Counted from the stretch's first letter, positions 1 through 64,000 are shown. The stretch: 64,000 nucleotides of DNA from Setoptus koraiensis (GCA_048013815.1 CM106585.1:17794001-17858000); one strand, 5' to 3'. Notes: generated by a model not told the origin, from the letters alone. Numbers and translations: made by a program.

Positions 1-3000
1 TTTATTATTTATTAATATTTTATTTTTTTATATTATATTTTATATTATTTATTTTTATTTATATTAATTTTATATAATTTATTTTATTTTTTATTATTAT
101 ATTTTTTAATTATTATATTATTATTAATATATATATTTTTTTATTATTTATTATTATTATTAATATTATATATATTTAATTTTTTTTATTTATATTTTTA
201 TTTTATATTATTTTATTTTTTTATAATATTTATATTATTTATTTTAATATATTTATTATATATTTATTTTTATTTTATTTTATTTTTTATTAATATATTT
301 TTTATATTATTATTTTTATTTTTTTATATATATATATATATTATATTTAATTTTATTTTTTTATTTATTATTTATTATTTTATTATAATAATTTATAATT
401 ATATTTATATAATTTTTATATTATTTATTTTATTTATATTTTTTTTAATTTTATTATATATTTATTATTTATTTTATTTAATTTTTATTTTATTTTATTT
501 TTTTTTATTTATTTATATTATTATTTATTATTAATAATTATTTTATTTATTATATTTATTTTTTATATTATTATTAATTTATTTTTTTATATATATTTAT
601 ATTATTTTATATAATTTATTTACTATATTTTTTATCTTTTTTTATTTTTATTTTATATATTATATATATCTTATTTAATTTAAATCTAATATATTGTATA
701 TGATTTATTTTTAATTTATCCTTTTTTATATTTAATTATCAATTTATTTTATTTATATATTTAATTTTTATTTACTAAAATATATGCTATGTATTGCTTT
801 TTTATATTATTCTTTTTTATTTTATTTCTAATATTTTCTATATATATATATATATTATATTATATATTTTTTCCTATATTTAATTTTTTATTATATATAA
901 TATATTATATTATCTTTATTGTTTCATATATAAATTATATCTATCTTTTTAAATTATTAGATTATTTATTTTATTTTTGATTTATTATTTATTTTATATA
1001 TTCTTTTTTATATTTTTAAATAAATATTTTATATTATATTTATAATTTATTTTATTTTTTTTTATATTTTTATTAAATTTTATATTTTTTAATTTATTTA
1101 ATTAATTTTTTTTTAATTTATATTATTTTAATATTTTATTTTTATTAATATTATTATTTAATTTAATATTTTTTATTTATTTTTTTATAATTTTAATATA
1201 AATTATTATATTATTTATATATTTATATATTATTTATTTTTATTTTATATTTTATAAATATTATTTTTTTTTTATAATAATTTTTATTTATAATTAATTT
1301 AATTATAAAATTTTATATATTATTTTTTTATAATATTAAATATTATTTTTATTATATATTTTTTTTTTATTTTATTTTTTATTTATATTATTATTTTTTT
1401 TATTATATTTTAATTTATTATATAATATTTATTATATAATATTATTTTTTTTTATTATTTATTTAATTTATATTTTATTATTAATTTTAATTTTTTATTA
1501 TTATTTTAATTTTTAATAATAATATTTTTTATTATTTTATTAATTATTTTTTTTTTTTAATATATATTATTATTATTTTTTATTTAATTTTTAATTATTA
1601 TATATAATATTTTTTTATTTTTTTTTATTATATTTTATTTTTTTTTTTTATATTTTTTTTTATATTATTATTTTTTTTATTTTTTTTAATTAATTTTTTT
1701 TTAAATATATAATTTTTATATTTTTATTATTATTTATTATTATTAATTAATTTTTTTATTTTAATTTATTTTATAATTTTATATATAATTATAATTTATT
1801 TTAATTTATTTATTTTAAATTTATTTAAATTATTATTTAATTTTTTTTTTATTATATATATATTTTATTTATAATTTTTTAATAATTTTAAATATTAATT
1901 ATTTTATTTTTTTATTAATTATTTTTTATAATTTTATTTTATTTATAATTTATATTTATTATTTTTTTTTATTTATTATATTTTTTTTATTTTATTTTTT
2001 TATTTTATTTTTATTTTTTTTTTATTTTAATTATTATTTTTATTTTTTTTTTTATTTATTTTATTTTTTTTTTTATTTTTTATTATTTTATAATTTTATA
2101 TTATTTTTATTATTTATATTTATATTTTATTATTAATTTATTATTTATTTATTTTTTTATTTTTTATTATATATTATTTTTTTTTTTTATTTTATTTATT
2201 TTTTATATAAATTTATTTTTTTTATATTATATTTATTAATTTTTTTTTATTAATATATTTTTTTATTATATATATTAATTTAAATTTTTTTTTTATTTTA
2301 TTTTTTATAATATTTAATTATATTTATTAATTATATTTTATATTATTTTTAATATATTTTATAATTTTTTTTATTTATATTTAATTTTATAAATTTATTA
2401 TTTATATATTAATTTAATATTATTTATATTTATTTTTTATATTATAATATATATATTTTAATATTTTATATTATTTTATATTTTTTTTATAATTATTTTT
2501 TTAATTATAATTTATTATTAATAATTATATATTTTATAATATTTTATATTATTTTTTTTATTATTTTTTTTATTATTTTTAATTTTATAATAATATTTAT
2601 AATATTATTATTTAATTTTATTTATTAATTTTTTTATAATTATTTTTATATATTAATATAATTATTTTTTTTTTATTTAATTTTTTTATATATATTATAT
2701 ATATTTTTTTAAATATATTATTTTTTATTAATTATTTATTTATTATATTATTTATTTTAAATTATATATATATATATATATTAATTTATTTATAATTTTA
2801 TTTTATATTTTATTTTTATTTTTTTTATTATATTTATATATTTATTTTTAAATTTTATTTTTATATTTATTTTTATATATTATAATTTAATAATAATATT
2901 ATAATATTTTTATATTTTTTATTTTTATTATATAATAAATTATTAATTTTATTTATTTAATATTTTTTATTTATTTTAATAATTTAATTATATTATTAAT

Positions 3001-5630
3001 ATAAAATTATATTATATTATATTTTTATATTTTATATTTATATATTTTATTATTTTTATATTAACTTTAATTAATAATTATATATTTTAATTTTAATATA
3101 TTATTTATAAATATTTATTAAAATTATTTATTTATTAATTAATTATTATTTTTATTTATTTATATTTTATTTATATTAATTAATTTTTATTTTTATTATA
3201 TAATTTTTTTTTTTTTTTTTAAAAATTATATAAATTTTTTATTTTATAATTTTTTTTATTTTTTATATTATATTTATTTTTTTTTATTTATAATTATATA
3301 TTTAATATTTTATTATTTTTTTATTTATTTATTTTATAAATTTTTTAAATATTATTTTTTAATATAATTTATTTATATTATAAATTATATTTTTATATTT
3401 ATATAAATAATTTTTTATTTAATTTTTTTTTTATTTATTAAATTATATATTATATTTATAATAAATTATTATTTTTTTTATTAATATTATTATTTTTTAT
3501 TTTTTATTATTTTATTATTTTATAAATTTTAATTAATTTTATAATTTTTTTATTTAATTATAATATTTATTTTTAATATATATTTTATTTAATTAATATA
3601 TTTATTATTTATTATATTATTATTTTATTATTATTATATATTTATATTTTATTATATTTTATTTTTATTTATTATTTTATATTTATTTTTTAAAATTTTT
3701 AATATTTATTATATATATAATATTTATTATTTATAATATTTATTATATATTTTTATTTTTTTTATTTTATTTTATAAAAATATTTATATTAATTTTTTAA
3801 TATATTTATTATTTTTATTTATTATTTTATATTTTATATTTATTTTATATTTTTTTTTATTTTTTTTATTATATATATTATTTTTTTAATTTATTTTTTT
3901 TATATTTAATATATTATTAAATTATTTTTTTTTATTATTATATAATTTTTTTTTAATTTATTTTTATTATTTTTTATTATTTATAATATATTTATTTATA
4001 ATTTTATATTTTATTATTATTAAAATAAATAATTATTATTTAATTTAAATTTATATAATATAATTATTTTATTTTAATTATTTAATATAATTTTTTTTTA
4101 ATTTTTTAATTATATTATTATAATATAATTTTTTTTAATTTTTTTTATTTTTTAAATTTATATATTTAAATATATTATTTTAATATATATTTATTTTTAT
4201 TTATTATAAATATATTATTTTTATATTTTTTATAAATTATTTTTTAAATATTAAATATATATTATATTTATTTTTAAATATTATAAATTTTATTATTATT
4301 TATTTATTTTTTTTAATTTTAATATAAATAATTATTTTATATATTTTTATTTTTTTAAATTTATTATATATTTTTTTTTTTTTTTATTTATTATTATATT
4401 AATTTTTTTATATATATTTATTATATTATATATTTTTATTTTTTTTATTTTAATTATTTATTTTTTTATATTTTATATTATTTATTTTTTTATTTAAATT
4501 TTTTTATTTTATATTTTATTATTAATTTAATATTTTAATTTTATTTTTTATTATATTTAATTTTATTTTTTATTATTAAATTATATTTAAAATATATAAT
4601 TTTTATATTAAAATATTATAATTTTTTTATATTTATATATTTTTTATATTTTATATTATATTATTTTTTTTATTTATATTTTTTATTTTTTAATATTTTA
4701 TTAATTTATATTATTTTTTATAAATTATTAATTTTTTTTATTTATATAAAATATTTATTTTATTATTTATTATATTTATATAAATTTATTATTTTATTAA
4801 TTTATAAATATTAATTATTATTATAATATTTATATTATTATTTATTATATATTTATTATAATTATTTTTATTTTATTTTATATTTATTTATTTATTTTAT
4901 ATTAATATTTTATATTTTTTTTTTTAATTAATAATTTTTATAAATATATATAATATTTATATTTTTTATTATTTAATTATTTTTTATTTTTATATTAATA
5001 TTATATTTTAATTAATTTATTATATTTTTTATTATTATTATAATAATTTTTTTTTTAAATTAATTTATTTTTTTATTTTTTTATAATATAATTTTTAATT
5101 ATATTTTTTTATTAATTTATATATATTTTTTTTTATTATATTTATATATTATTATATATTTTATTTTATTTATATATATTATTATATATTTTTTATAAAT
5201 TTTAAAAATTATTTATTTTTATTTAATTTATATTTTTATTTTATTATTTTTATATATTTTTATTTTTTTTATTTATTTATTATTTTATTTAATTTTTTTT
5301 TTATAATTTTTTAAATTATATTATATATATTTTATAATATTTTATTTTTATTATATTATTTAATATTTTTTTTTTATTTTTATATTTTATTTTTTATTAT
5401 TTATATTTTTTATAATATTTTTTTATTTTTATATTTATATTTTTTTTTATAATTATTATATTTATTATTTTATATTTTATTATTTAATTATTTATTTTTA
5501 ATAATAAATATTTTATATATTTTTATTATATTACATAATTATTATTTAATTAATTTTATTATTTATTTTTAATCTATTTTTTTATATAATTATTTTTATT
5601 TATATTTTTTAATTTTATATATATATTATA
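1..5630. other. Extreme AT-only low-complexity block (non-periodic, T-rich on + strand)
   Basis: Almost only A/T. C/G appear in a patch at about 620-995 and as a few isolated C (about 3065, 5534, 5574). No repeat unit is visible. Abrupt boundary with normal-composition DNA at about 5635. Confidence 0.95.
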
Positions 5631-5631
5631 T

Positions 5632-6714
5632 TTATACACGGTCTTTGATTAGGATGGCTGGTGCATAAAATCCTATATTTCCAAAAAGATTTCCGGCCAA
5701 ATATATAAACATTCCTAGATTTGTTACATAATTTAGATTGAATATTCTCCTGACACAACTCATGAAATCTGTTTTGATCTTTTCTTTTGTTATTTTTATT
5801 CTTAGTTCTTGAGCATTTACCCCAGCCTGTTTCAGTCCCTCACTTGCTCCCAGTTTCTCAGCCGTTTTATATCCTATTACTATTTCTTTTGATGCCTGCT
5901 TAGCTAATTGGCCCTCTGATGGTTTGATTGTCGGAACTAGGTTCACCTTGCTCGGATTTACATCCGTCTGTAGCTCACCTGTCTGGCTAACATCTGCACC
6001 AGTTATTGTTGATTGTTGCGTCACCGATGCAGGCACTTGACTAACTTTTCTTTTGCTGCCTGTCTTGAGGTTGTTGATAGTAAAATAAAAATTGGCTGGT
6101 GTCAAAAGAGATCCAAATAGAATTCCGCCAAGGGCAATATATGATGTTATGCGCATTGAATAGCGCCAATCATAATCCCTTATCAGGTAATCAACAACGG
6201 GACCGCCAAGTACTATGCTACCTGCCGCTGATCCTGCAACTGAGATGCCCACAGCTAGTCCCAGTCGGTAGTGGAAATATTCAGACACAATAACCAATTG
6301 TGGCATTGTCATTAAACAAAGGCCAATGCCTCCAACAATGCCAACGGGAAATATCAATGACTCAATGCTCTGCATGTAACTGCCAATAAATAAGCCAAAA
6401 AATATAGTTACACTTCCTGCTATAGTCACTGTTCGACTGCCTAGCCATTCAATAAGTACTCCTACAAATGGTCCAGGTATAAATGACATACCGAGTGCAG
6501 TAGATATCACCCAGGAAGTTTTGGCGCGGGTTACCTTGAAATCCTCCACAAAGGCCACATGAAAATTTGACAATGAATCACTTATTCCTTCTGCTATAAA
6601 ACTGTTCATGAATGTTGCGAAAACAATCACCCAACCATAGCCACCGTCTAAGAAAACCTCCTCCGCTTCTGCATCTGTGATGACCTCCTCGATTTTTGCT
6701 GAAGATTTTTCCAT
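5632..6714 (-). CDS. Monocarboxylate transporter (SLC16/MFS), N-terminal part; breaks off after about TM7
   Basis: DGGYGWVIV motif, 6 TM helices, long loop, then TM7 (LFGNIGFYAPAILIKDR). The stop lies at the AT-block junction and CGT|GTATAA could be a splice donor. TM8-12 are absent from the window. Confidence 0.85.
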   Translation of the reverse strand: MEKSSAKIEEVITDAEAEEVFLDGGYGWVIVFATFMNSFIAEGISDSLSNFHVAFVEDFKVTRAKTSWVISTALGMSFIPGPFVGVLIEWLGSRTVTIAGSVTIFFGLFIGSYMQSIESLIFPVGIVGGIGLCLMTMPQLVIVSEYFHYRLGLAVGISVAGSAAGSIVLGGPVVDYLIRDYDWRYSMRITSYIALGGILFGSLLTPANFYFTINNLKTGSKRKVSQVPASVTQQSTITGADVSQTGELQTDVNPSKVNLVPTIKPSEGQLAKQASKEIVIGYKTAEKLGASEGLKQAGVNAQELRIKITKEKIKTDFMSCVRRIFNLNYVTNLGMFIYLAGNLFGNIGFYAPAILIKDRV

Positions 6715-53900: not shown

Positions 53901-55652
53901 ATGAATATGAACATATTGTCGCTTTCATCATTTGTTGTTTTGCTGATGCTAAATTCACTCTATTTTTGCAAAATCAGCTGCCTAAAACAGAGAGACAACG
54001 ATGATTATGGATGTGATCTCAAGAAGGTTGAAACTAGGGCTACATACGAGTGCAAAAGAAGATATCCCGGAGAGAAGTGGATAAATATAACCACTTATGA
54101 CAACAGTGTGAAGATCATTGATATAAAACTTGAAACAATTGCAGACACAACCAATGTAACTATAAACAATCCCGCCCCTAAACCATTTATCAACACTGTT
54201 CCATATACTATCAATGTGATATTTGGTAGCAATGATGTTTTGAGGAAGTTTGAAATCGATGATATCATCGCTACGCCAAAGTCAATCACTGATTTAAAGA
54301 ACGAAACTGATAGAATTGAGCATTTCAGAATGAGATTCCGTGATAAAATTGATGACAAAGTTAGAAAATTTGTTTATCCAGAAGAAAAAACACCCGCGCA
54401 AATTTGGTCAAATTATTTACCTATTTCGCCTTATTTTCTTTCTGGTTCTAATGATGCTAGTATGTCTCTAAAAACATACGAGCTAGAATCGTCGGAGATC
54501 TTTTTACATAATGGAGAGAAAAAGTTCGTCATAGTGCCACCATTGAAGGATCATACTACGACTATCAGTTTTCGATCGCTAACTGATATAAAAAACACTG
54601 CAGTTAATCCTAAGCACACTATCACCATCATAGATAAGAAGATTGAATTTGATTGTTCGAAGTGCAATTGCGACGATAAATCAAAACATGAAATGAGGGG
54701 TCACACTCGTTTTAATTTCGTGAATCTAGAGTTAATGGGTAACATAGATAAAATAATATCCAATGTTTGGTATTCTATACGCAACTGTCCTATAGAAATC
54801 GAATTGAATCTCAACTATCACCTCCAAACACAAAATTTTAGATATTCTATCTTGAGATTGATGGGGGCAGGCATGGAATTCCATCATATTGATTCATTTG
54901 CATCACCACCAACCAAATTGAATTGCAATCAAGCTGACATATGCCAAATGGTTCAGAGACTACCTGTGTTTAGGAGACATTTAAGGGGACATTGTTATAT
55001 AGGAAAGGATAAAAGGATTTGGCTTAAAGATGTGAAATCAGAAAATGAAAATCTTCGCCTGATCGAATGTGATGGTCCTCCGCAGACATCATTGGCCAGT
55101 TACGCTGATGAGTTTATCAAGCGACCCCTCCTAGAAGGGCAAAATAACCTCTTGTTAATAGATCCGGAGCGTGTTCCCGCATCAACCACAGAAAAGACCA
55201 CAGTGAAAGACAAAAATGACGATCAAAGACCTAGTTTTGTTGTCATAATTGTTGGTTTGTTTATATTGATTGGAGCATCAATGTTTTTTTTCTTAGTGTA
55301 CTATTTGAATAAGCGACAGCCACCCAAGGTAAGCTTACCACCGCCGATTATTGTAGTAAATACACCACCAAAACAGTTTCGAACTATTAAGTCGAAAAGT
55401 CATTCAAAGACATCCAGATCGAGACGCAAATCGAAATCAGGGAGAAAGTCGCCATTCGTTCCTATGAAACAGAAGAGCGTTATTTTTCAGGAGACACCAG
55501 TAACGATAGACATGTTCATACCGCAAGCAGGAAAATCTTTCAAATCGGTGAAGTCTGCGAAATCTGCAAAATCTGTAAAATCTGCAAAATCTGCCAAATC
55601 ACTCCATAGTGTCAGTTCTAAAGTGGACAAACTATTAGAAAGAATCGGCTAG
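53901..55652 (+). CDS. Single-pass membrane protein of an unrecognised family (member 3); KSVKSAKSA tail
   Basis: Signal peptide, FVIVPP, CPIEIELNLN, GMEF, LNCNQADIC, TM FVVIIVGLFILIGASMFFFLVYYL, basic KS-repeat tail. Confidence 0.8.
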   Translation: MNMNILSLSSFVVLLMLNSLYFCKISCLKQRDNDDYGCDLKKVETRATYECKRRYPGEKWINITTYDNSVKIIDIKLETIADTTNVTINNPAPKPFINTVPYTINVIFGSNDVLRKFEIDDIIATPKSITDLKNETDRIEHFRMRFRDKIDDKVRKFVYPEEKTPAQIWSNYLPISPYFLSGSNDASMSLKTYELESSEIFLHNGEKKFVIVPPLKDHTTTISFRSLTDIKNTAVNPKHTITIIDKKIEFDCSKCNCDDKSKHEMRGHTRFNFVNLELMGNIDKIISNVWYSIRNCPIEIELNLNYHLQTQNFRYSILRLMGAGMEFHHIDSFASPPTKLNCNQADICQMVQRLPVFRRHLRGHCYIGKDKRIWLKDVKSENENLRLIECDGPPQTSLASYADEFIKRPLLEGQNNLLLIDPERVPASTTEKTTVKDKNDDQRPSFVVIIVGLFILIGASMFFFLVYYLNKRQPPKVSLPPPIIVVNTPPKQFRTIKSKSHSKTSRSRRKSKSGRKSPFVPMKQKSVIFQETPVTIDMFIPQAGKSFKSVKSAKSAKSVKSAKSAKSLHSVSSKVDKLLERIG

Positions 55653-56551: not shown

Positions 56552-58957
56552 ATGAGTGCGCTAGAGCTAATTATAATTTCAGCAGTTCTGTTGTTGCTGC
56601 TGATTATATATTTATTGATTCGAGCGAAACGTAGAATAAATCAACGAAAAAAATCTGCAGACCAATCGGTATCTCATGAACGTGATTGTCATTATGGTTA
56701 TGACAATCCAGATCAAAGTGCTCATCAGATCAACGTGGAGCCACAGGAGAATGTTTTAAAGCAAGATAATTCAAATGATGGCGATCTAGAGCTAAACAGT
56801 AAGGAGCAAGACGATTTAGAACGATTAGAAATAGCAAAGGAAGAAGATGAGTTATTAGATCTAAGGTTAATAGATATGAGGAAAAAGGAAGAAGCATTGA
56901 AAATGGAGAATTTGATCAAAGAAGAGAAACACCGGCAAGAAATTGAATTGTCCTTGGATAAAAAATTGTCTTTCTACGACGAATGGCTCGATCAAGATCT
57001 TGAAGAATGCGAACACAAACTGACAAAAATCGCTTGGAGGCAAGCAAACGATGGATGCCTCATCGCCGAGATAAAATTATGCGCCATTGAGCCCTCTTTT
57101 CTCCATGATGTTGGCAAATTAACTAGGCTAGAATTGTCCGAACACGATGAGAATGATGTCATGAAATGGTCAGCCATAGGTCACCTCTATGAAGGAAGTG
57201 TTTCAGATAAGAACCTCATAGAAATCAAGATGAAAGCAATGAAAAAATGTAAGCCGACAAAGGGCTTGTTCAAGATTGTCAATATCGATCGACGGATCAC
57301 TCACCACAAGAAGATTGATTTTCTTAAGGATCGAATAAAAAGAATTTCAACTGACAGTTTATTGTGCAAGCTGATTCTCGCAATCAACAAGAGTACAGTT
57401 TACTTTTCCAAACATCTAAACACTTTGCCGGATATACCGCTAGATGAGCTTGATGACGATCGTGACCTGATTTTTCAGTGTCAAAAAGAGGCCGTCAGAA
57501 ATGCTTTGCGCACTCGAGTTAGTTTAGTCGCGGGGCCACCGGGCACGAGCAAAACACTGACTTCAGCCACATTAGCACTGCATCTATTTAGAACAAGATT
57601 GGCAAGCAGCTCGAAAATTCTAATCTGCGCACCCACCAACGAATCTCTAGATAACATTGCCGATGAGATCTATAAGTCAGGCAAATTGAATGTCGTTCGG
57701 ATCGACTTTCAGTTGAATACCAACAGATTGAAAAAGCCTTACTATCTAGATAAACTCTTGATTGACAAGATTAGAAGTGCAATAGTTACGCCATCGTTAG
57801 ATATGGAGCAATCCATTTCTAGCTCATGTCTGCCCCAGGAGCCACTCGCAGAGTATTTGCACTTGTTGGCTTCGGACAAATTGGATTTTTCAACCGTTGA
57901 TTCTTGCGAAGTGAATAAATTGCTAGAACTAAAAACTAAATGCGAGAAAAGAATAATCGATGATTGTCATGTTATCTGCTGCACTTGTGATGCTGTTTTC
58001 AAATTGATCGAATATGGCCCGTATTTATTTGATTCAATCATAGTTGATGAATGCAATCAAGTGAGCGTTCCGGATGGTATATTACTTTTGCAGTTTCTAC
58101 CACGAAGAATTGTGCTTGTAGGCGACAACAAGCAACTGTGTCCCGTTATAAAGGATAAATTCAAGAGAAAATACACCCATTCAAATATCGTTTTTTATAA
58201 CAGACTTTTGAGTATAGGCTTCAAGCCAACAATGCTGGATGTTCAGTGTCTCATACATCCGGAAATATTTAAGTTTTCTAATGAACAATTTTACTACAAC
58301 AGCATCACAAGTGGTCTACCTTTCAATTATTCACAATGGAGAGGATTTCCAAATAGATGTCCATTTCCTAATCAAGAGAGGCCCATTTATTTTCATTGTC
58401 ATAATATTGATAACTTTAGAGAGAAGTCAAAATATTGCTTCGATACCTCGATTAATTGCGGAGAGTTAGACATTGTTTTCACCACAATAGAGGTATTAAT
58501 ATCAAGAGGTATTAGGAGAAAACAAATCGGAGTGATAGTGTCCACCAAGGAACATTGCCAATACTTGATAGATAAAATAACACCAAGAGACTTTGATGGA
58601 AACATCATCACCAACATTCCATCAGATGATTTTATCGAAGTGGACACTGTTGAGGCATTTCAAGGTCGCCACAAAGATTATATTATTGTGTCACTGGTGG
58701 AATCTACGAAATACACGAGCCCTTTAGCTGACATAAACAAACTTAATGTTATGTTAACACGTGCCGCATGTGGACTAATTTTGATCGGAAATGCGCTTAG
58801 TTTACTGCTGAAAAACTATATAATGTTCGACGTGTTGATCGAGAACTTGTCCACGAGAGGCCTATTGTTTGACCAATTATTGTCGGAGAAATCACGACCC
58901 ATCAGATGGAAACAGCGAAATCTTAATAAAGCAGTAAGGCCCAATACATTGTTATAA
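56552..58957 (+). CDS. UPF1-derived SF1 helicase with N-terminal TM anchor and coiled coil
   Basis: GPPGTSKT, ICAPTN, IIVDECNQ, VGDNKQL, FQGRHKD, LNVMLTRA; UPF1 1B-like WSAIGH. N-terminus MSALELIIISAVLLLLLIIYLLIRAKRR. Confidence 0.88.
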   Translation: MSALELIIISAVLLLLLIIYLLIRAKRRINQRKKSADQSVSHERDCHYGYDNPDQSAHQINVEPQENVLKQDNSNDGDLELNSKEQDDLERLEIAKEEDELLDLRLIDMRKKEEALKMENLIKEEKHRQEIELSLDKKLSFYDEWLDQDLEECEHKLTKIAWRQANDGCLIAEIKLCAIEPSFLHDVGKLTRLELSEHDENDVMKWSAIGHLYEGSVSDKNLIEIKMKAMKKCKPTKGLFKIVNIDRRITHHKKIDFLKDRIKRISTDSLLCKLILAINKSTVYFSKHLNTLPDIPLDELDDDRDLIFQCQKEAVRNALRTRVSLVAGPPGTSKTLTSATLALHLFRTRLASSSKILICAPTNESLDNIADEIYKSGKLNVVRIDFQLNTNRLKKPYYLDKLLIDKIRSAIVTPSLDMEQSISSSCLPQEPLAEYLHLLASDKLDFSTVDSCEVNKLLELKTKCEKRIIDDCHVICCTCDAVFKLIEYGPYLFDSIIVDECNQVSVPDGILLLQFLPRRIVLVGDNKQLCPVIKDKFKRKYTHSNIVFYNRLLSIGFKPTMLDVQCLIHPEIFKFSNEQFYYNSITSGLPFNYSQWRGFPNRCPFPNQERPIYFHCHNIDNFREKSKYCFDTSINCGELDIVFTTIEVLISRGIRRKQIGVIVSTKEHCQYLIDKITPRDFDGNIITNIPSDDFIEVDTVEAFQGRHKDYIIVSLVESTKYTSPLADINKLNVMLTRAACGLILIGNALSLLLKNYIMFDVLIENLSTRGLLFDQLLSEKSRPIRWKQRNLNKAVRPNTLL

Positions 58958-59044
58958 CCTCTTTGTCGATCGCAATATATTCGAGGCAGTCGAGTGGCAA
59001 TCAAAATTGAGATACTTTTGTGTTGTTTTGCGCACATACAATAC

Positions 59045-59700
59045 GACAGTGTCCACTTGTTGAGAGTGGCATCTCGGTAATATTATCACAAGGATAGCTA
59101 CCAATTGGGGCATGTCCGACGTTGGATGCAGATGGCAAACGGACGACTCCAGTTTGGAGTCTCCAAACCAGTGCCGTCACAATCGAAAAGCCATTTTTTC
59201 GCGTGCCAACTAGAGCCCGTGAGACAAGTGATCGACAAATAATTTATTTGAAATAAATGCTCATGGACCTTTGTCACACGACTCTAGAATTCCCGAGTGA
59301 CATCTTGCCTGATACTTGCGGTGTGATCTCCAGTCGATACACTATCACTGGTAGTCTATCAGACGCCGTGGAGATGCAAGGCCTGCTCGAGCACTTATCG
59401 GCTGCAACCGTATTTTTTTTTTCAATCGGCTGATCGTCATTTTTTTTTCATTCGGCTGCCTGCCCTGTTGAGCTCGCAATGTTACGAGCTGGCCTGTAAC
59501 TAAAGAGCCGTTGCATTCACGGCGTGCTTGCGACCGATGCAGTGCACTTTCACGTTGTGCGGACCGAGAAATGCGAAACATGCTGATTAAGTGTTTAAAA
59601 CTTGTGATCCACGGGGACAATGAAATGAAATTCTCATACACTTGCAGCATTCACCAAACAGCTTCTAGTCACCATTCCAGGGAATTGAACATCTATTAGT
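59045..59700 (+). repeat. Upstream segment of the helicase tandem unit, duplicated at about 62805-63560
   Basis: Shared blocks TGCAGATGGCA, CTCCAAACC, GAGCCCGTGAG, GCTGGCCTGTAA, plus an identical 28-mer at 59597-59624 and 63470-63497. Confidence 0.85.
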
Positions 59701-59714
59701 CGTATGCCGATTAT

Positions 59715-62216
59715 GTGACTCTATTTGCGAAAACTCTGAAAATTTTGCGATCTTGGCACCAGAAACAAATGGATTCCATTACGACAGAGACTCTTTTGTC
59801 GGTTAGCCTAAACATGCTGGTCAATAAGTCCAACGACGCTATTGAGGGATTACAATTCGATGACTGTAAAGCAAACTCAATCGACCTCGAAACGCTGGAG
59901 CCGGTTCTCAAGACAGCCTCTAATATCAAGTCGCTCAAACTTACAAATCGAAGTGGACAGAATGTTGTCAGGAGAATAGGGCCTGATGCTCACTACATCA
60001 TAACAGACAATTGTCCGCATTTGACAAGTCTCGATGTGTCCGGAGTCGCAATCGCTCCCAATGAGCTCTCCTCGATCAAAGCGAAATGTAACAAAATGAC
60101 AACGTTAAAGGTAACTGAAACCAAACTGGATGACCCAGAAGATCTGAAAATTCTCAGACGTACTGGCTATACAGACAGACGTCTTGTCATTACTTCGGCA
60201 GCAGAGAGAAGAGTGGAAGCATCATCGGGAGACGAATATCAATTGAGGAATGAACTGTCATCTAATGGCTGTGATTGGCTTACAAACGATCTCAAGGACT
60301 TTGAGCAAATGGTGACAAGAATAGAATGGGGTGCCGTTTCAAAAGGACTTTATGAGGATTGCATCGTGACAATAAAAACAGAGGAATTGTTCATCCAAGA
60401 TTTAGACAAAAACACCGAAATGAAATTCTCCCAATACAATCGCAGTGGCGGGACCGTATTCTCAGAAAGCTGTTGGTTCTTTCGTTGCGGTCATACACAT
60501 CCTAGCGGCCAATTATGCGTTGTATTCAAGGATGTATTAAAAAACTCCACCCCATTTATGCGCTTCATGTTGAAGCCAACTGAAGGTATATTCAAATTAA
60601 CTGATCCCAAGCTGCATAAGATACATCGAAAGAAGAGAGATTTACCGAACGCTGTTAAACGAATCTCTTCAGACTATCTGCTGCGTTCAATTATACTTGC
60701 AAAAGGAAATGAATATGCGACCCTAGGAAAGTGGAACACATTAAAATCTGTGTCAATAAACAAGATTACGTTCGACAATGATTCTGTTCAACTCGATGAG
60801 AATCAAATGAAAGCAATCAAAAACTCATTGTGTCACAGAATCAGTTTAATCATGGGCCCTCCTGGCACAGGCAAGACGTACACTTCGGCCTTGTTGGCTC
60901 TTCAACTATGCAAAACGAGAATCTCCAGCAACTCTAAGATACTTGTTTGTGCATCAAGTGATGCGGCCGTCGATAGGATAGCAGATAATATTCATGAATT
61001 GGGCCAGCACAGTATAGTGAAATTCGGTGGTGAGGATGCTAACAATTGTAATTGGAAACCCCACTATCTCGATGTGTCTCTTCAGAACAGGGCAATTCGT
61101 GACATAACCTCACTTGAGGGTCATGATAAAGATCTCGTACTAAGTATTAAGTATCTGGAGGAAAGTCGCAGGAGGATCTTCAGAAAGAGACGAGTGATTT
61201 GTTGCACTTGCAATGATATTCCTGATTTGATCACATATGGTCCCTTCATAATTGATTCTATAATTTTTGATGATTGCAGTCAGATCAACCTGCTTGACGG
61301 CCTACTAGTTCTGCAAACTATGCCTAGACGTATTGTGCTTGTGGGTGACGACGATCAATCTGTGCCGGTTAATCGAGATACCCCGCCGAAGGATCAAGAT
61401 TATTCGAGAGCAGCTTTCCACAGCAAAGTCACCAGTGCTGGTTTTAAGCCAATCATGCTAGATGCTCAATACCGAATGCATCCAGAGATAGCAAGATTTC
61501 CCAACGCACACTTTTACGGAGGAAAGATGAAAAACGGTATTCAAGCAAGCGATAGACAATGGACGGGTAGAAGAGGTGAATGTCCATTTCCCAACCCTGA
61601 CCAACCCATTTATTTTCATTGCCACACATCAGAGGAAATCTCGAGAGATGGAGGGATATCATGGATCAATGAAAGAGAAGCTGACGCTGTTGTGGCTACA
61701 ATTAAAGTTCTACTCTCGAGAGGTATAAAGAGGAGTGAGATTGGAGTTATAACACCCTCTGATGATCAAAAGAACCTTATCAGAGATCGAACGATGTCAA
61801 TAGATTCCAAGGGAGAGACAAGCAAAAGGGACAGCTCGGCCGATCATATTTATCGTATGCTTAAATTGAATTACCAAATGATGCCAAAAGAAAAATTTGT
61901 AGACGATTTCATAGATGTGGACACTGTTGATGCTTTCCGAAATCGCGATAAAAACTACATCATCGTGTCATTTGTTAGGTCAAAAGAGTGCTCAGGTTAT
62001 ATCACTGATCGTAATGTTCTGAATGTGATACTAACTCGCGCCAAGCACGGTCTCATTATCATCGGCAACGCGGTGGCTTTGTCCAGCAGCCCCCTGCTAA
62101 ATTCGTTCGTAAACTATTGTTCTGATGAGGACCTGCTTTACTCAGAATCGCTATCGAAAAATTCTCGGCCCGTCACATTAGATCAACTCATGGAGTGCAC
62201 CATTGTAACTCAGTAA
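59715..62216 (+). CDS. UPF1-derived SF1 helicase with N-terminal Cys-containing LRRs
   Basis: CPHLTSLDVSG / CNKMTTLKV LRRs. GPPGTGKT, IIFDDCSQ, QYRMHPEI, CPFPNPDQP, EEISRDGGISWINEREA, IGVITP, LNVILTRA. First ATG in frame is 59769. Confidence 0.9.
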   Translation: MTLFAKTLKILRSWHQKQMDSITTETLLSVSLNMLVNKSNDAIEGLQFDDCKANSIDLETLEPVLKTASNIKSLKLTNRSGQNVVRRIGPDAHYIITDNCPHLTSLDVSGVAIAPNELSSIKAKCNKMTTLKVTETKLDDPEDLKILRRTGYTDRRLVITSAAERRVEASSGDEYQLRNELSSNGCDWLTNDLKDFEQMVTRIEWGAVSKGLYEDCIVTIKTEELFIQDLDKNTEMKFSQYNRSGGTVFSESCWFFRCGHTHPSGQLCVVFKDVLKNSTPFMRFMLKPTEGIFKLTDPKLHKIHRKKRDLPNAVKRISSDYLLRSIILAKGNEYATLGKWNTLKSVSINKITFDNDSVQLDENQMKAIKNSLCHRISLIMGPPGTGKTYTSALLALQLCKTRISSNSKILVCASSDAAVDRIADNIHELGQHSIVKFGGEDANNCNWKPHYLDVSLQNRAIRDITSLEGHDKDLVLSIKYLEESRRRIFRKRRVICCTCNDIPDLITYGPFIIDSIIFDDCSQINLLDGLLVLQTMPRRIVLVGDDDQSVPVNRDTPPKDQDYSRAAFHSKVTSAGFKPIMLDAQYRMHPEIARFPNAHFYGGKMKNGIQASDRQWTGRRGECPFPNPDQPIYFHCHTSEEISRDGGISWINEREADAVVATIKVLLSRGIKRSEIGVITPSDDQKNLIRDRTMSIDSKGETSKRDSSADHIYRMLKLNYQMMPKEKFVDDFIDVDTVDAFRNRDKNYIIVSFVRSKECSGYITDRNVLNVILTRAKHGLIIIGNAVALSSSPLLNSFVNYCSDEDLLYSESLSKNSRPVTLDQLMECTIVTQ

Positions 62217-63632
62217 TTGTTGCTTCGCCAAAGAAAACACTTCATAAATAAATTGAACATTCATGAGGCCGTGCCTTGCAGCGTCAGTCAGCTAAGTTGC
62301 ATTTTGCGTATATTGTTGTTATCTTTTTCTCAGTTCAATCAAGCTCTGTACACTGCCTTATCATCTCTCGTTGTTGTTTTGCTCGCGATCATCAGATTGT
62401 AACATGATGCTCTCAATCCAAATGTATAGGTTATAGTCTTTTTGTTCTCCCGGCGAATTTTGAAAGGGGAGGATTACAGCCGAGGAGAATCATCTTGGCC
62501 TCAAATCAGGTAACGACTACCCTGGATTCAAGGGTATATATCAAAGTTGTAAGCAATCTAATCATACCTGTCATGTAGAGAACTGTGTATCATAAGATGA
62601 AGTTCAATCGAGTAGAAAATCATCATTCTAAGATGATTGGTTGGCTATTGATTGAGGAACGCCAATCGGAAGTGAAAAGGCTCGAATGCAATCTAGTTGC
62701 CGGCACATGTCACAAGCGACGTCACTTCGATCCCAATAAATATTTATATTTGAAGAAGTCAAGTAGTAGTCGAAACTGTGAGACTTTTGTGTTGCTTTAT
62801 AACTGACCGTGTCCATTTGTTGACAGCAGCACCATGATTATGTTCATAACGGCTCCGATGATAGGTTATCATTAGATGCAGATGGCAGGCACTTATTTAC
62901 GGAAGTAATTCTAGAATCACGTATATTTCGAAAACGAGACGGTTCGGAGTTAGTTCGGCGGAGCAAACTCCAAACCGGTAGCTTCACAATCCGCGAAGCC
63001 ATATTTCACGTGTAAAGGAGCCCGTGAGTTAAGTCTCAGTTCTTCACGAAAAAGACTTTATTCGATGAAGTTCGTTCACGTGAGAATAATGAGCGATTGA
63101 CAAATAAATGTTGATAAGTTGTACTTGTGAGTACATGAACTCCGTGATCCGACTCTGGATTCCAGAGTCTGGAATGCCTGAAACTCAAATGGTACTTGTG
63201 TGATCTCTAGTACACATGTAGGCACACTGCAGAGAGGCGAGGTCTTCTCAAGCACTACTTGCGCCTCGTCGGCGTCAAATTTCGGTCACAATCATCATTT
63301 GTTTCATTCGGATACATGTCCCGTGTTGAGCGGCTCAACTTGAGCCAACAATGTTGCAAGCTGGCCTGTAATGATGAAGCCGTTGTTTTCATGGCGTGCT
63401 TGTGACTTGTTGCATTGAACTTTCATATTGCGCGGACTTGGAAAAAAGAAGCACGCCGAGTTATTGTTCAAAACTTGTGATCCACGGGGACAATGAAGTG
63501 AAATTCTCATACCCTTGCATCAAGTCAATATTCCCGTAAATTAAAGTTTAATTATTAAACACATACTGGTATTCCGATTGTGTAATTCTGATTGCAAAAA
63601 TTCTCATTGCGGAATCTCAGTACCCTTAGCAA

Positions 63633-64000
63633 ATGGACCCCATGACAAATGCAGCCCTTGTGTCAGTTCGCCTTAACATTCTAGTGAATCAGTCCGACGA
63701 GGCAATCGAGGAATTACAATTCGACGACTGCGAAGCAAACTCGGTCGACCTCGAAACACTGGAGCTTATTCTCAAGGCAGCACCCAATCTCACGTCACTC
63801 AAATTTACAAATCGAAAAGGACAGAATGTAATCAGGAGAATAGGGCCCGATGCTCACTACATCATAACAGACAATTGTTCGAAATTGATAAGCCTCGACG
63901 TGTCTGGGGTGTCAATCGCTCCAACTGAGCTCTCATCGATTAGGACGAAATGTAATCAAATAACAACACTGAAAGTAACTGAAAGTAAACTGGATGACCC
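63633..64000 (+). CDS. Third helicase-array gene (LRR N-terminus), truncated by the window edge
   Basis: Open frame MDPMTNAALVSVRLNILVNQSDEAIEELQFDDCEANSVDLETLE...IRRIGPDAHYIITDNCSKLISLDVSG, colinear with 59769 onward. Not in the ORF track because no stop falls in the window. Confidence 0.88.
   Translation, partial: MDPMTNAALVSVRLNILVNQSDEAIEELQFDDCEANSVDLETLELILKAAPNLTSLKFTNRKGQNVIRRIGPDAHYIITDNCSKLISLDVSGVSIAPTELSSIRTKCNQITTLKVTESKLDD

What the first reader, a model, noticed from the sequence alone, without database searches (positions are those of the whole stretch)
56552..64000. Tandem array of UPF1-derived helicases with swapped N-terminal modules
Seen: at least three adjacent, co-oriented intronless genes. 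Two complete ones share UPF1-specific signatures (WxxIGH 1B, RISxDxLL, CPFPNxxxPIYF, EEIS..G.S.IN..EA) and similarity to each other. The UPF2-binding CH zinc domain is replaced by a TM plus coiled coil in one and by Cys-LRRs in the other; the third gene repeats the LRR N-terminus. Known: UPF1 is usually a single-copy NMD factor, while related SF1B helicases (MOV10/Armitage, ZNFX1) act in small-RNA and antiviral pathways. Inference: a lineage-specific, diversifying RNA-surveillance or immunity module uncoupled from NMD. This is the best candidate for an undescribed system here.
Basis: partly seen in the sequence, partly recalled or inferred. Interest (0 to 1): 0.82.

Follow-up and report, generated by a model that had tools for sequence, protein, structure and literature searches.

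The report
Tandem UPF1-like pseudo-helicases with new heads
Three neighbouring genes encode relatives of the RNA-quality-control helicase UPF1 that have swapped its regulatory zinc domain for a membrane anchor or a leucine-rich-repeat head and have lost key ATP-hydrolysis residues while staying under purifying selection, so they probably work as RNA-binding adaptors, not as motors.

Summary
Window 56552-58957 (801 aa), 59769-62216 (815 aa) and 63633-64000 (cut by the window end) are co-oriented, uninterrupted ORFs. The first two are 35% identical over about 680 aa. The third repeats the head of the second at 73%.

Their cores are closest to canonical UPF1 by sequence, tree and fold, and cover UPF1's whole helicase region. 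The CH zinc domain and the SQ tail are absent. Gene 1 has an N-terminal signal anchor and an acidic linker. Genes 2 and 3 have about four RI/CC-type LRRs, and no F-box was detected.

New here:
- Residues invariant in 50 UPF1 representatives are replaced (Walker A, DE, the motif IV Arg, FQGRE).
- A relative (Logan run SRR33593474) has a gene 1 orthologue with the same architecture and further motif loss. It also has a head-less member with all motifs canonical, and a tandem neighbour.
- dN/dS is about 0.22, so the genes are maintained and not visibly diversifying.

Best reading: a lineage-restricted UPF1-clade family, uncoupled from NMD, whose helicase fold acts as a binding module. The immunity idea is untested, and no transcription data were obtainable.

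The scan had already noted related F-box/LRR plus UPF1-like genes elsewhere in this genome (for example s1-307570).

The parts
56552..58957 (+). Gene 1, 801 aa: signal anchor, acidic linker, then a UPF1-like helicase region with degenerate ATPase motifs (GPPGTSKT, QCLIHP, FQGRH)
   Evidence: orthologue P0241 is 55% identical with the same architecture
56564..56623 (+). N-terminal hydrophobic segment (residues 5-24), followed by RAKRRINQRKK. Predicted N-out/C-in signal anchor, which puts the helicase in the cytosol
   Evidence: Mean Kyte-Doolittle 3.04 over 19 residues. The orthologue has 3.57 at the same place. Topology is inferred from the positive-inside rule
56642..56971 (+). Acidic, helical, low-complexity linker (residues 31-140)
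   Evidence: 37% identity to the orthologue, with indels, dN/dS 0.62
56972..58954 (+). Helicase region of gene 1: stalk and 1B-like barrel (residues 141-305), RecA1 plus 1C (306-540), RecA2 plus the family C-terminal motif LSEKSRPI (541-801)
   Evidence: 56%, 64% and 70% identity to the orthologue, dN/dS 0.22. tblastn of UPF1s reaches back to residue ~200
59769..62216 (+). Gene 2, 815 aa from the ATG at 59769: LRR head plus a UPF1-like helicase region with DD in place of DE and FRNRD in place of FQGRE
59769..60173 (+). Head of gene 2: about four RI/CC-type leucine-rich repeats (residues ~25-135). No F-box detected
   Evidence: Weak Pfam hits to LRR_NXF1-5 (E 1.8e-4) and LRR_6. Repeated matches to ribonuclease inhibitor. 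Beta-alpha repeat pattern in a low-confidence model whose best fold matches are mostly short LRR domains. Atlas leads to FBXL-type LRRs
60210..62213 (+). Helicase region of gene 2 (residues 148-815): stalk, 1B-like barrel, RecA1, 1C, RecA2
   Evidence: Model residues 148-807 align to human UPF1 293-911, Z 29.2, 571 residues. Foldseek E 9e-39
63633..64000 (+). Gene 3, first 122 codons: a copy of the gene 2 LRR head. The rest lies beyond the window
   Evidence: 73% amino-acid identity, no gaps. dN/dS 0.22, dS 0.62
59467..59660 (+). Conserved non-coding block upstream of gene 2. It includes a 24-mer (59601-59624) repeated exactly upstream of gene 3
   Evidence: 34-38 of 50 bases identical per 50-column block of the alignment, against about 58% identity at synonymous sites. 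No Rfam match
63340..63535 (+). Matching conserved block upstream of gene 3 (limits approximate; exact 24-mer at 63474-63497)

Best explanation
The three genes are members of a lineage-restricted offshoot of the UPF1 branch of SF1B helicases. They keep the whole UPF1 helicase region (stalk, 1B barrel, RecA1, 1C, RecA2) but have lost the CH zinc domain that binds UPF2 and the SQ tail, so they are not the NMD factor.

A targeting head replaces the CH domain. In gene 1 it is an N-terminal signal anchor plus an acidic linker, which should tether the helicase fold to the cytosolic face of a membrane. In genes 2 and 3 it is a short RI/CC-type LRR domain, presumably a protein-binding head.

Residues needed for ATP binding and hydrolysis are replaced, and replaced differently in each member and between orthologues, while the rest of the fold is under purifying selection. 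The most likely mechanism is therefore that the helicase fold serves as an ATP-independent or very slow RNA or RNP binding module, which the head brings to a membrane or to a partner protein.

Shown: architecture, kinship, motif changes, selection, conservation in a relative. Inferred: loss of ATPase activity, membrane topology, RNA binding, adaptor role.
For: Kinship:
- PDB sequence search gives human UPF1 200 and 163 bits against Sen1 103 and 87, and ZNFX1, IGHMBP2 and DNA2 at 77 bits or less.
- The exhaustive representative search gives only UPF1-type proteins below the two family members, and 39 of the next 50 carry PF09416.
- In the tree the family is a 100/100 clade inside a 95/96 group with canonical UPF1s. 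That group excludes the SETX-like, IGHMBP2-like and archaeal UPF1-like rows.
- Fold: gene 2 residues 148-807 align to UPF1 293-911, Z 29.2.

No CH domain.

Motif decay at positions invariant in 50 UPF1 representatives:
- gene 1: GPPGTSKT, QCLIHP, FQGRH
- its orthologue P0241: GPPGTGVT, VNESNQ, QYLIHP, FQGRY
- gene 2: FDDCSQ, FRNRD
- P0242 keeps every motif.

Maintenance:
- dN/dS is 0.22 for gene 2 against gene 3 and 0.22 for the gene 1 helicase region against its orthologue, where RecA2 is 70% identical.
- Both strain variants in gene 1 are synonymous.
- The strain contig of run X3 shows 3 differences in about 5 kb of coding sequence, against 5 differences plus indels in 0.43 kb of spacer.

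The membrane anchor is conserved in the orthologue. A tandem neighbour is also present in the relative.
Against: - No biochemical or expression data exist. The four runs laid behave as DNA, with contigs that cross the spacers at even depth.
- Gene 1 of this genome still has the Walker A lysine and the DE pair, and gene 2 has an intact Walker A, so residual ATPase activity is possible.
- RNA binding is assumed from homology only.
- The LRR head is supported only by weak profile hits and a low-confidence model (pLDDT 47).
- The family's position relative to canonical UPF1s is unresolved, and long branches are involved.
- MOV10 and HELZ were not in the tree.
Confidence: 0.55

Rival explanations
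1. They are working RNA helicases with unusual motifs: specialised, CH-less UPF1 paralogues that translocate on RNA at a membrane (gene 1) or with an LRR-bound partner (genes 2 and 3).
For: Gene 1 keeps K in Walker A, DE in motif II, Q in motif III and R in motif VI. Gene 2 keeps Walker A, the motif IV Arg and the motif VI Arg. The relative's P0242 has every motif canonical, so the family includes likely active members. The whole fold is under purifying selection.
Against: Every member except P0242 lacks at least two residues that are invariant in 50 UPF1 representatives. The gene 1 orthologue has lost the Walker A lysine and the motif II Asp while staying 64-70% identical elsewhere. That pattern shows ATPase activity is not what selection maintains in that lineage.
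Confidence: 0.22
2. Genes 2 and 3 are SCF ubiquitin-ligase substrate adaptors (F-box plus LRR) that use the helicase fold to recognise an RNA or RNP, like the F-box/LRR plus UPF1-like genes that the scan noted elsewhere in this genome.
For: The LRRs are of the Cys-containing or RI type common in FBXL proteins. Scan notes report many F-box/LRR plus UPF1-like fusions in the same genome (not checked here). The first ~14 residues of genes 2 and 3 (ITTETLLSVSLNML in gene 2) loosely resemble the first F-box helix (my reading of the sequence).
Against: No F-box family is reported by Pfam, even at E up to 10, for either head. Only about 25 residues precede the first LRR, too few for a ~45-residue F-box. 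No upstream ORF looks like one.
Confidence: 0.1
3. The array is a fast-diversifying antiviral or transposon-sensing module, comparable to ZNFX1 or MOV10.
For: Tandem duplication with variable heads, and expansion of related genes across the genome. Paralogue contigs at 85-95% likeness pile up on gene 2. RI-type LRRs also occur in NLR sensors (established knowledge).
Against: dN/dS is 0.22 in the head that would be the variable sensor surface. Gene 1 has a one-to-one orthologue about as conserved as presenilin. Nothing points to induction or to viral targets.
Confidence: 0.1
4. They are untranscribed or decaying duplicates of no function.
For: No RNA evidence could be obtained. The catalytic motifs are degenerate.
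Against: The ORFs are uninterrupted for 801 and 815 codons. dN/dS is 0.22 in two independent comparisons. The orthologue and its membrane anchor are conserved across species. The only variants in gene 1 are synonymous. A conserved upstream block is shared by genes 2 and 3.
Confidence: 0.03

Closest known systems
UPF1 / SMG-2 / Nam7 (NMD helicase, SF1B)
   Same: The whole helicase region is shared: stalk helices, 1B barrel with W..GH, RecA1, 1C, RecA2. UPF1 is the best sequence, fold and tree neighbour.
   Different: No CH zinc domain and no SQ tail. A membrane anchor or an LRR head sits in place of the CH domain. Only 82 (gene 1) and 94 (gene 2) of the 162 columns conserved in at least 90% of UPF1s keep the UPF1 residue, and invariant ATPase residues are replaced. 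There are several tandem copies instead of one gene.
MOV10 / MOV10L1 / Armitage (UPF1-like helicases of small-RNA pathways)
   Same: UPF1-like SF1B helicases without a CH domain. Armitage works at the mitochondrial outer membrane (established knowledge), which resembles a membrane-tethered gene 1.
   Different: Armitage is recruited by partner proteins and has no anchor of its own, and it is an active ATPase. No MOV10 sequence was available for the tree, and MOV10-type clusters were no closer than other SF1B clusters in the Atlas.
F-box/LRR plus UPF1-like half-helicase genes noted elsewhere in this genome (s1-307570 and others)
   Same: Same genome, UPF1-like module with lost ATP-binding residues, LRR-containing head, tandem arrangement.
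   Different: By those notes the other genes carry an F-box and only the first RecA half. The genes here are full length, have no detectable F-box, and one has a membrane anchor. I could not read those sequences, so the relationship is not tested.
ZNFX1 (antiviral, UPF1-like helicase)
   Same: SF1B core. ZNFX1 is reported at the mitochondrial outer membrane during infection (established knowledge).
   Different: Much weaker similarity: 63 and 47 bits against 200 and 163 for UPF1. No NFX1-type zinc fingers.
Inactive helicase homologues used as scaffolds (for example S. pombe Cwf11, the Aquarius homologue)
   Same: An SF1B fold kept under selection after loss of the ATPase motifs (established knowledge for Cwf11; here).
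   Different: Different subfamily and a different cellular setting. This is an analogy only.

Membership tests
UPF1 (NMD factor) orthologue | SF1B core with both RecA domains (AAA_11 plus AAA_12) | tested here: met
   Pfam E 4e-29 and 2e-29 (gene 1), 9e-22 and 6e-43 (gene 2)
UPF1 (NMD factor) orthologue | Closer to UPF1 than to other SF1B subfamilies | tested here: met
   PDB phmmer 200 and 163 bits for UPF1 against 103 or less for the others. Tree: 95/96 group with canonical UPF1s. MOV10 and HELZ were not included
UPF1 (NMD factor) orthologue | 1B beta-barrel and 1C insertion in RecA1 | tested here: inconclusive
   Pfam UPF1_1B_dom is not detected. However, the model has six strands at residues 180-278 (pLDDT 45-60), and residues 148-807 align to UPF1 293-911. 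The W..GH motif is kept
UPF1 (NMD factor) orthologue | N-terminal CH zinc-knuckle domain that binds UPF2 (PF09416) | tested here: not met
   No Pfam hit. No tblastn hit of eight UPF1 N-termini anywhere in the window. The gene 1 N-terminus is confirmed by its orthologue
UPF1 (NMD factor) orthologue | Invariant ATPase residues (GK[TS], DE, motif IV Arg, FQGRE, motif VI Arg) | tested here: not met
   Gene 1: G to S, R to L, E to H. Gene 2: E to D, Q to R, G to N, E to D. All at positions invariant in 50 UPF1 representatives
UPF1 (NMD factor) orthologue | C-terminal SQ-rich region phosphorylated by SMG1 | tested here: not met
   Both proteins end about 45-65 residues after motif VI, and no SQ cluster is present
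F-box/LRR (FBXL) SCF adaptor | F-box motif (~45 residues, binds Skp1) | tested here: not met
   No F-box family at E up to 10 for the heads of genes 2 and 3. No upstream ORF resembles one
F-box/LRR (FBXL) SCF adaptor | Cys-containing or RI-type leucine-rich repeats | tested here: inconclusive
   Profile hits below threshold (LRR_NXF1-5 21.5 bits against a cut-off of 30.5; ribonuclease inhibitor E 0.024) and a low-confidence model with beta-alpha repeats
ZNFX1 | NFX1-type zinc fingers, with ZNFX1 as the closest helicase core | tested here: not met
   No zinc-finger family found. 9q9z scores 63 and 47 bits
MOV10 / Armitage | Groups with MOV10-type helicases in a phylogeny | not tested
The Atlas ranks a MOV10 cluster no better than other SF1B clusters

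The most novel reading that the evidence does not exclude
This animal lineage has turned a UPF1-derived, ATPase-dead RNA-binding fold into a modular family. The same fold is joined to different targeting heads: a membrane anchor here, LRRs here, and F-box/LRR elsewhere in the genome. Together these would form an undescribed set of RNA- or RNP-directed adaptors that deliver bound transcripts or UPF1 partners to membranes, partner proteins or the ubiquitin system.
Probability: 0.25. Interest if true: 0.8.

Novelty: new variant of a known kind. Interest (0 to 1): 0.6.

Why it matters
UPF1 is normally a single, strongly conserved gene whose activity depends on its CH domain and its ATPase cycle. 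Here the UPF1 fold has been duplicated, stripped of both, fitted with new heads, and kept under purifying selection in at least two species. This gives a natural test of what a UPF1 helicase region can do without ATP hydrolysis or UPF2 control. It is also a candidate for a membrane-tethered RNA-binding device in an animal. The related species even supplies a built-in control, P0242, which has intact motifs.

Tried and rejected
- Word-indexed protein searches returned only canonical UPF1s. They missed P0241 and P0242, which the exhaustive search found, so they cannot be used as negatives.
- Exact look-ups of the window's own gene 1 and gene 2 products found nothing.
- Both sequencing-run searches gave runs that behave as DNA when laid on the window. 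Contigs cross the spacers at even depth, so transcription is untested.
- Scans of viral contigs and JGI metagenome contigs with family-specific peptides ([KQR]PIYFHC, PRRIV.VGD) found no relative. A viral or environmental origin is therefore unsupported.
- Rfam and tRNA scans of the window and of the conserved upstream block were empty.
- F-box detection failed.
- The structure of the LRR head alone had pLDDT 47, and its fold matches are only leads.
- The organism could not be named. The closest named presenilins are from animals, and scan notes mention Vav-like and neuron-navigator-like genes.
- Three literature searches found no description of such an architecture.
- I considered a transposon or Helitron helicase and rejected it. 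The cores sit with UPF1 in the tree, and the only repeat structure seen is the tandem duplication itself.


Full report
**What is there.** Three co-oriented, uninterrupted ORFs fill window 56552-64000.
- Gene 1 is 56552-58957, 801 aa.
- Gene 2 is listed from a GTG at 59715. Its likely start is the ATG at 59769 (815 aa), because gene 3 begins at the homologous Met.
- Gene 3 starts at 63633 and is cut by the window end after 122 codons.

Gene 1 and gene 2 are 35% identical over 681 residues (E 7e-120). The head of gene 3 is 73% identical to that of gene 2 with no gaps. No other copy lies in the first 56 kb.

Neighbouring genes are ordinary eukaryotic ones and are also uninterrupted: presenilin, a P4-ATPase, a patatin-ankyrin lipase, a DHHC palmitoyltransferase and an MFS transporter. 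The closest named presenilins are from animals.

**Kinship.** Both complete proteins carry AAA_11 and AAA_12.
- Against all PDB sequences, human UPF1 scores 200 bits (gene 2) and 163 bits (gene 1). Sen1 scores 103 and 87. DNA2, ZNFX1, IGHMBP2 and Aquarius score lower still.
- An exhaustive HMMER search of 1.84 billion representatives found two proteins well above everything else: P0241 at 386 bits and P0242 at 288 bits. Below them comes a continuum of UPF1-type proteins at about 210 bits or less. Of the next 50, 39 carry the UPF1 CH domain and 27 the UPF1 1B domain.
- In a maximum-likelihood tree (LG+C20, 37 rows) the four family members form a 100/100 clade. It lies inside a 95/96 group with the canonical UPF1s of animals, fungi, plants, trypanosomes, Entamoeba and Stentor. 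That group excludes the SETX-like, IGHMBP2-like and archaeal UPF1-like helicases.
- The family's position within that group is an unresolved basal polytomy with other long branches. An AU test disfavours placing it with the sampled animal UPF1s (p 0.02). The group was named after the tree had been seen, and long-branch attraction is a real risk. Given how narrow the family's distribution is, a fast-evolving lineage-specific offshoot remains the simpler reading.
- MOV10 and HELZ could not be included.

**Architecture.** An AlphaFold2 model of gene 2 has mean pLDDT 62: the helicase core is at 70-90 and the head is below 50.
- Model residues 148-807 align to human UPF1 residues 293-911, that is the whole helicase region. 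VIA-align gives Z 29.2 with 571 of 602 residues aligned, and Foldseek gives E 9e-39.
- The model has six strands at residues 180-278, followed by a long helix, where UPF1 has its 1B barrel and stalk. The alignment keeps the UPF1 W..GH motif.
- Pfam's 1B model does not reach significance.
- No CH zinc domain exists in either protein or anywhere in the window.
- Both proteins end about 45-65 residues after motif VI and have no SQ-rich tail.

The heads that replace the CH domain:
- Gene 1 starts with a 20-residue, very hydrophobic segment (mean hydropathy 3.0) followed by RAKRRINQRKK, then an acidic helical linker. By the positive-inside rule this is an N-out/C-in signal anchor, which leaves the helicase in the cytosol. 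This topology is an inference.
- Genes 2 and 3 start with about four repeats of the ribonuclease-inhibitor or Cys-containing LRR type. All the support is weak: LRR_NXF1-5 at E 1.8e-4 and LRR_6, repeated matches to ribonuclease inhibitor at E 0.024, and a beta-alpha repeat pattern in a pLDDT-47 model. That model's best fold matches are mostly short LRR domains such as tropomodulin, Skp2, D3 and NXF1.
- No F-box was detected.

**Relatives elsewhere.** P0241 and P0242 both come from Logan contigs of run SRR33593474. The same run holds the closest presenilin, at 59% identity, in the same divergent MFS-presenilin arrangement as the window. It is therefore a related species. Synonymous divergence for gene 1 is about 1.0.
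- P0241 is the orthologue of gene 1. It is 55% identical over its full length and has the same anchor, linker and helicase region.
- P0242 has no head and begins at the stalk.
- The first 190 bases of the P0241 contig encode the C-terminal end of a further family member, directly upstream on the same strand. Tandem arrangement is therefore shared, though the order differs.
- Family-specific peptides were not found in viral or JGI metagenome contigs.
- Notes from this scan report many F-box/LRR plus UPF1-like genes elsewhere in this genome. I could not read those sequences.

**Catalytic motifs.** In 50 diverse UPF1 representatives the following are invariant: the Walker A G-K-T, the DE pair, the motif III Gln, the Arg of YRMHP, Q-G-x-E-K of FQGREK, and T-R-A of motif VI. 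The family reads as follows:

| Member | Walker A | Motif II | Motif IV | Motif V |
|---|---|---|---|---|
| Gene 1 | GPPGTSKT | VDECNQ | QCLIHP | FQGRH |
| P0241 | GPPGTGVT | VNESNQ | QYLIHP | FQGRY |
| Gene 2 | GPPGTGKT | FDDCSQ | QYRMHP | FRNRD |
| P0242 | canonical | canonical | canonical | canonical apart from Y for F (YQGRE) |

Every member except P0242 lacks at least two invariant residues, and the two orthologues differ in which ones they lack. The losses they share (the motif IV Arg and the motif V Glu) probably predate the species split. The loss of the Walker A lysine and the motif II Asp in P0241 came later.

**Selection.**
- dN/dS is 0.22 for the LRR head, gene 2 against gene 3 (dS 0.62).
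- dN/dS is 0.22 for the helicase region of gene 1 against P0241, and 0.62 for the linker.
- RecA2 is 70% identical between the orthologues despite the motif decay.
- The two strain variants in gene 1 are synonymous. The X3 strain contigs differ from the window at 3 places in about 5 kb of coding sequence, but at 5 places plus indels in 0.43 kb of spacer.

The genes are therefore maintained, and what selection maintains is the fold, not ATP hydrolysis. Nothing here shows diversifying selection.

**Interpretation.** These are CH-less, UPF1-clade paralogues. Most likely they act as RNA- or RNP-binding modules with little or no ATPase activity. Gene 1 would be delivered to a membrane by its own anchor, and genes 2 and 3 to a partner by their LRR head. 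Loss of activity, RNA binding and topology are all inferred.

Rivals are active but atypical helicases, SCF adaptors with a cryptic F-box, an immune sensor array, and dead duplicates. The last is the least likely.

Of its interpretation, 'UPF1-derived', 'lineage-specific' and 'uncoupled from NMD' are supported. 'Diversifying' and 'immunity' are not.

**Limits.** No RNA data could be obtained, because the runs found behave as DNA. The rest of the genome could not be searched for a canonical UPF1 or for a family count. The LRR head rests on weak evidence. The two word-indexed searches missed the true relatives and are not valid negatives.

Noticed in passing
window 1-5632: A 5.6-kb stretch made of A and T only (GC 0.000 in most 200-base bins, T-rich), with a degenerate repeat and no clean period. 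It abuts, and appears to cut short, the MFS transporter ORF: 360 aa here against 678 aa in the relative's syntenic contig L001. It could be a real insertion or centromere-like tract, or an assembly artefact.
   Followed up: partly
window 59467-59660 and about 63340-63535: A non-coding block 110-300 bases upstream of the gene 2 and gene 3 start codons is more conserved than the genes' synonymous sites. It includes an identical 24-mer (CTTGTGATCCACGGGGACAATGAA). It has no Rfam match and is not found upstream of gene 1. It may be a shared promoter or 5' UTR element.
   Followed up: partly
L003:1-190 (+), Logan contig of SRR33593474: The C-terminal end of another family member lies directly upstream of the gene 1 orthologue in the relative. 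It contains IIIGNA...LLYSEILSEKSRPLTL, much like gene 2. The tandem array is therefore shared, but the gene order differs from the window.
   Followed up: partly
window 60248-60450 and 60974-61243: Run X7, labelled as a different organism (C), holds two short low-depth contigs (203 and 270 bases) that match gene 2 with 0 and 1 differences. This looks more like carry-over or a mixed sample than a conserved orthologue.
   Followed up: no
window 53901-55652 (+): A 583-aa ORF just upstream of gene 1 has a signal-peptide-like start, a membrane segment near the C-terminus and a Ser/Lys-rich repeat tail (SAKSVKSAKS...). It has no Pfam family.
   Followed up: no
L002 (Logan contig of ERR13998745): An uninterrupted 878-aa canonical UPF1 with a CH domain, on an AT-rich contig (GC 0.33), was the best-scoring UPF1 for gene 2. 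It is from a different, unidentified organism and is not sister to the family in the tree.
   Followed up: partly
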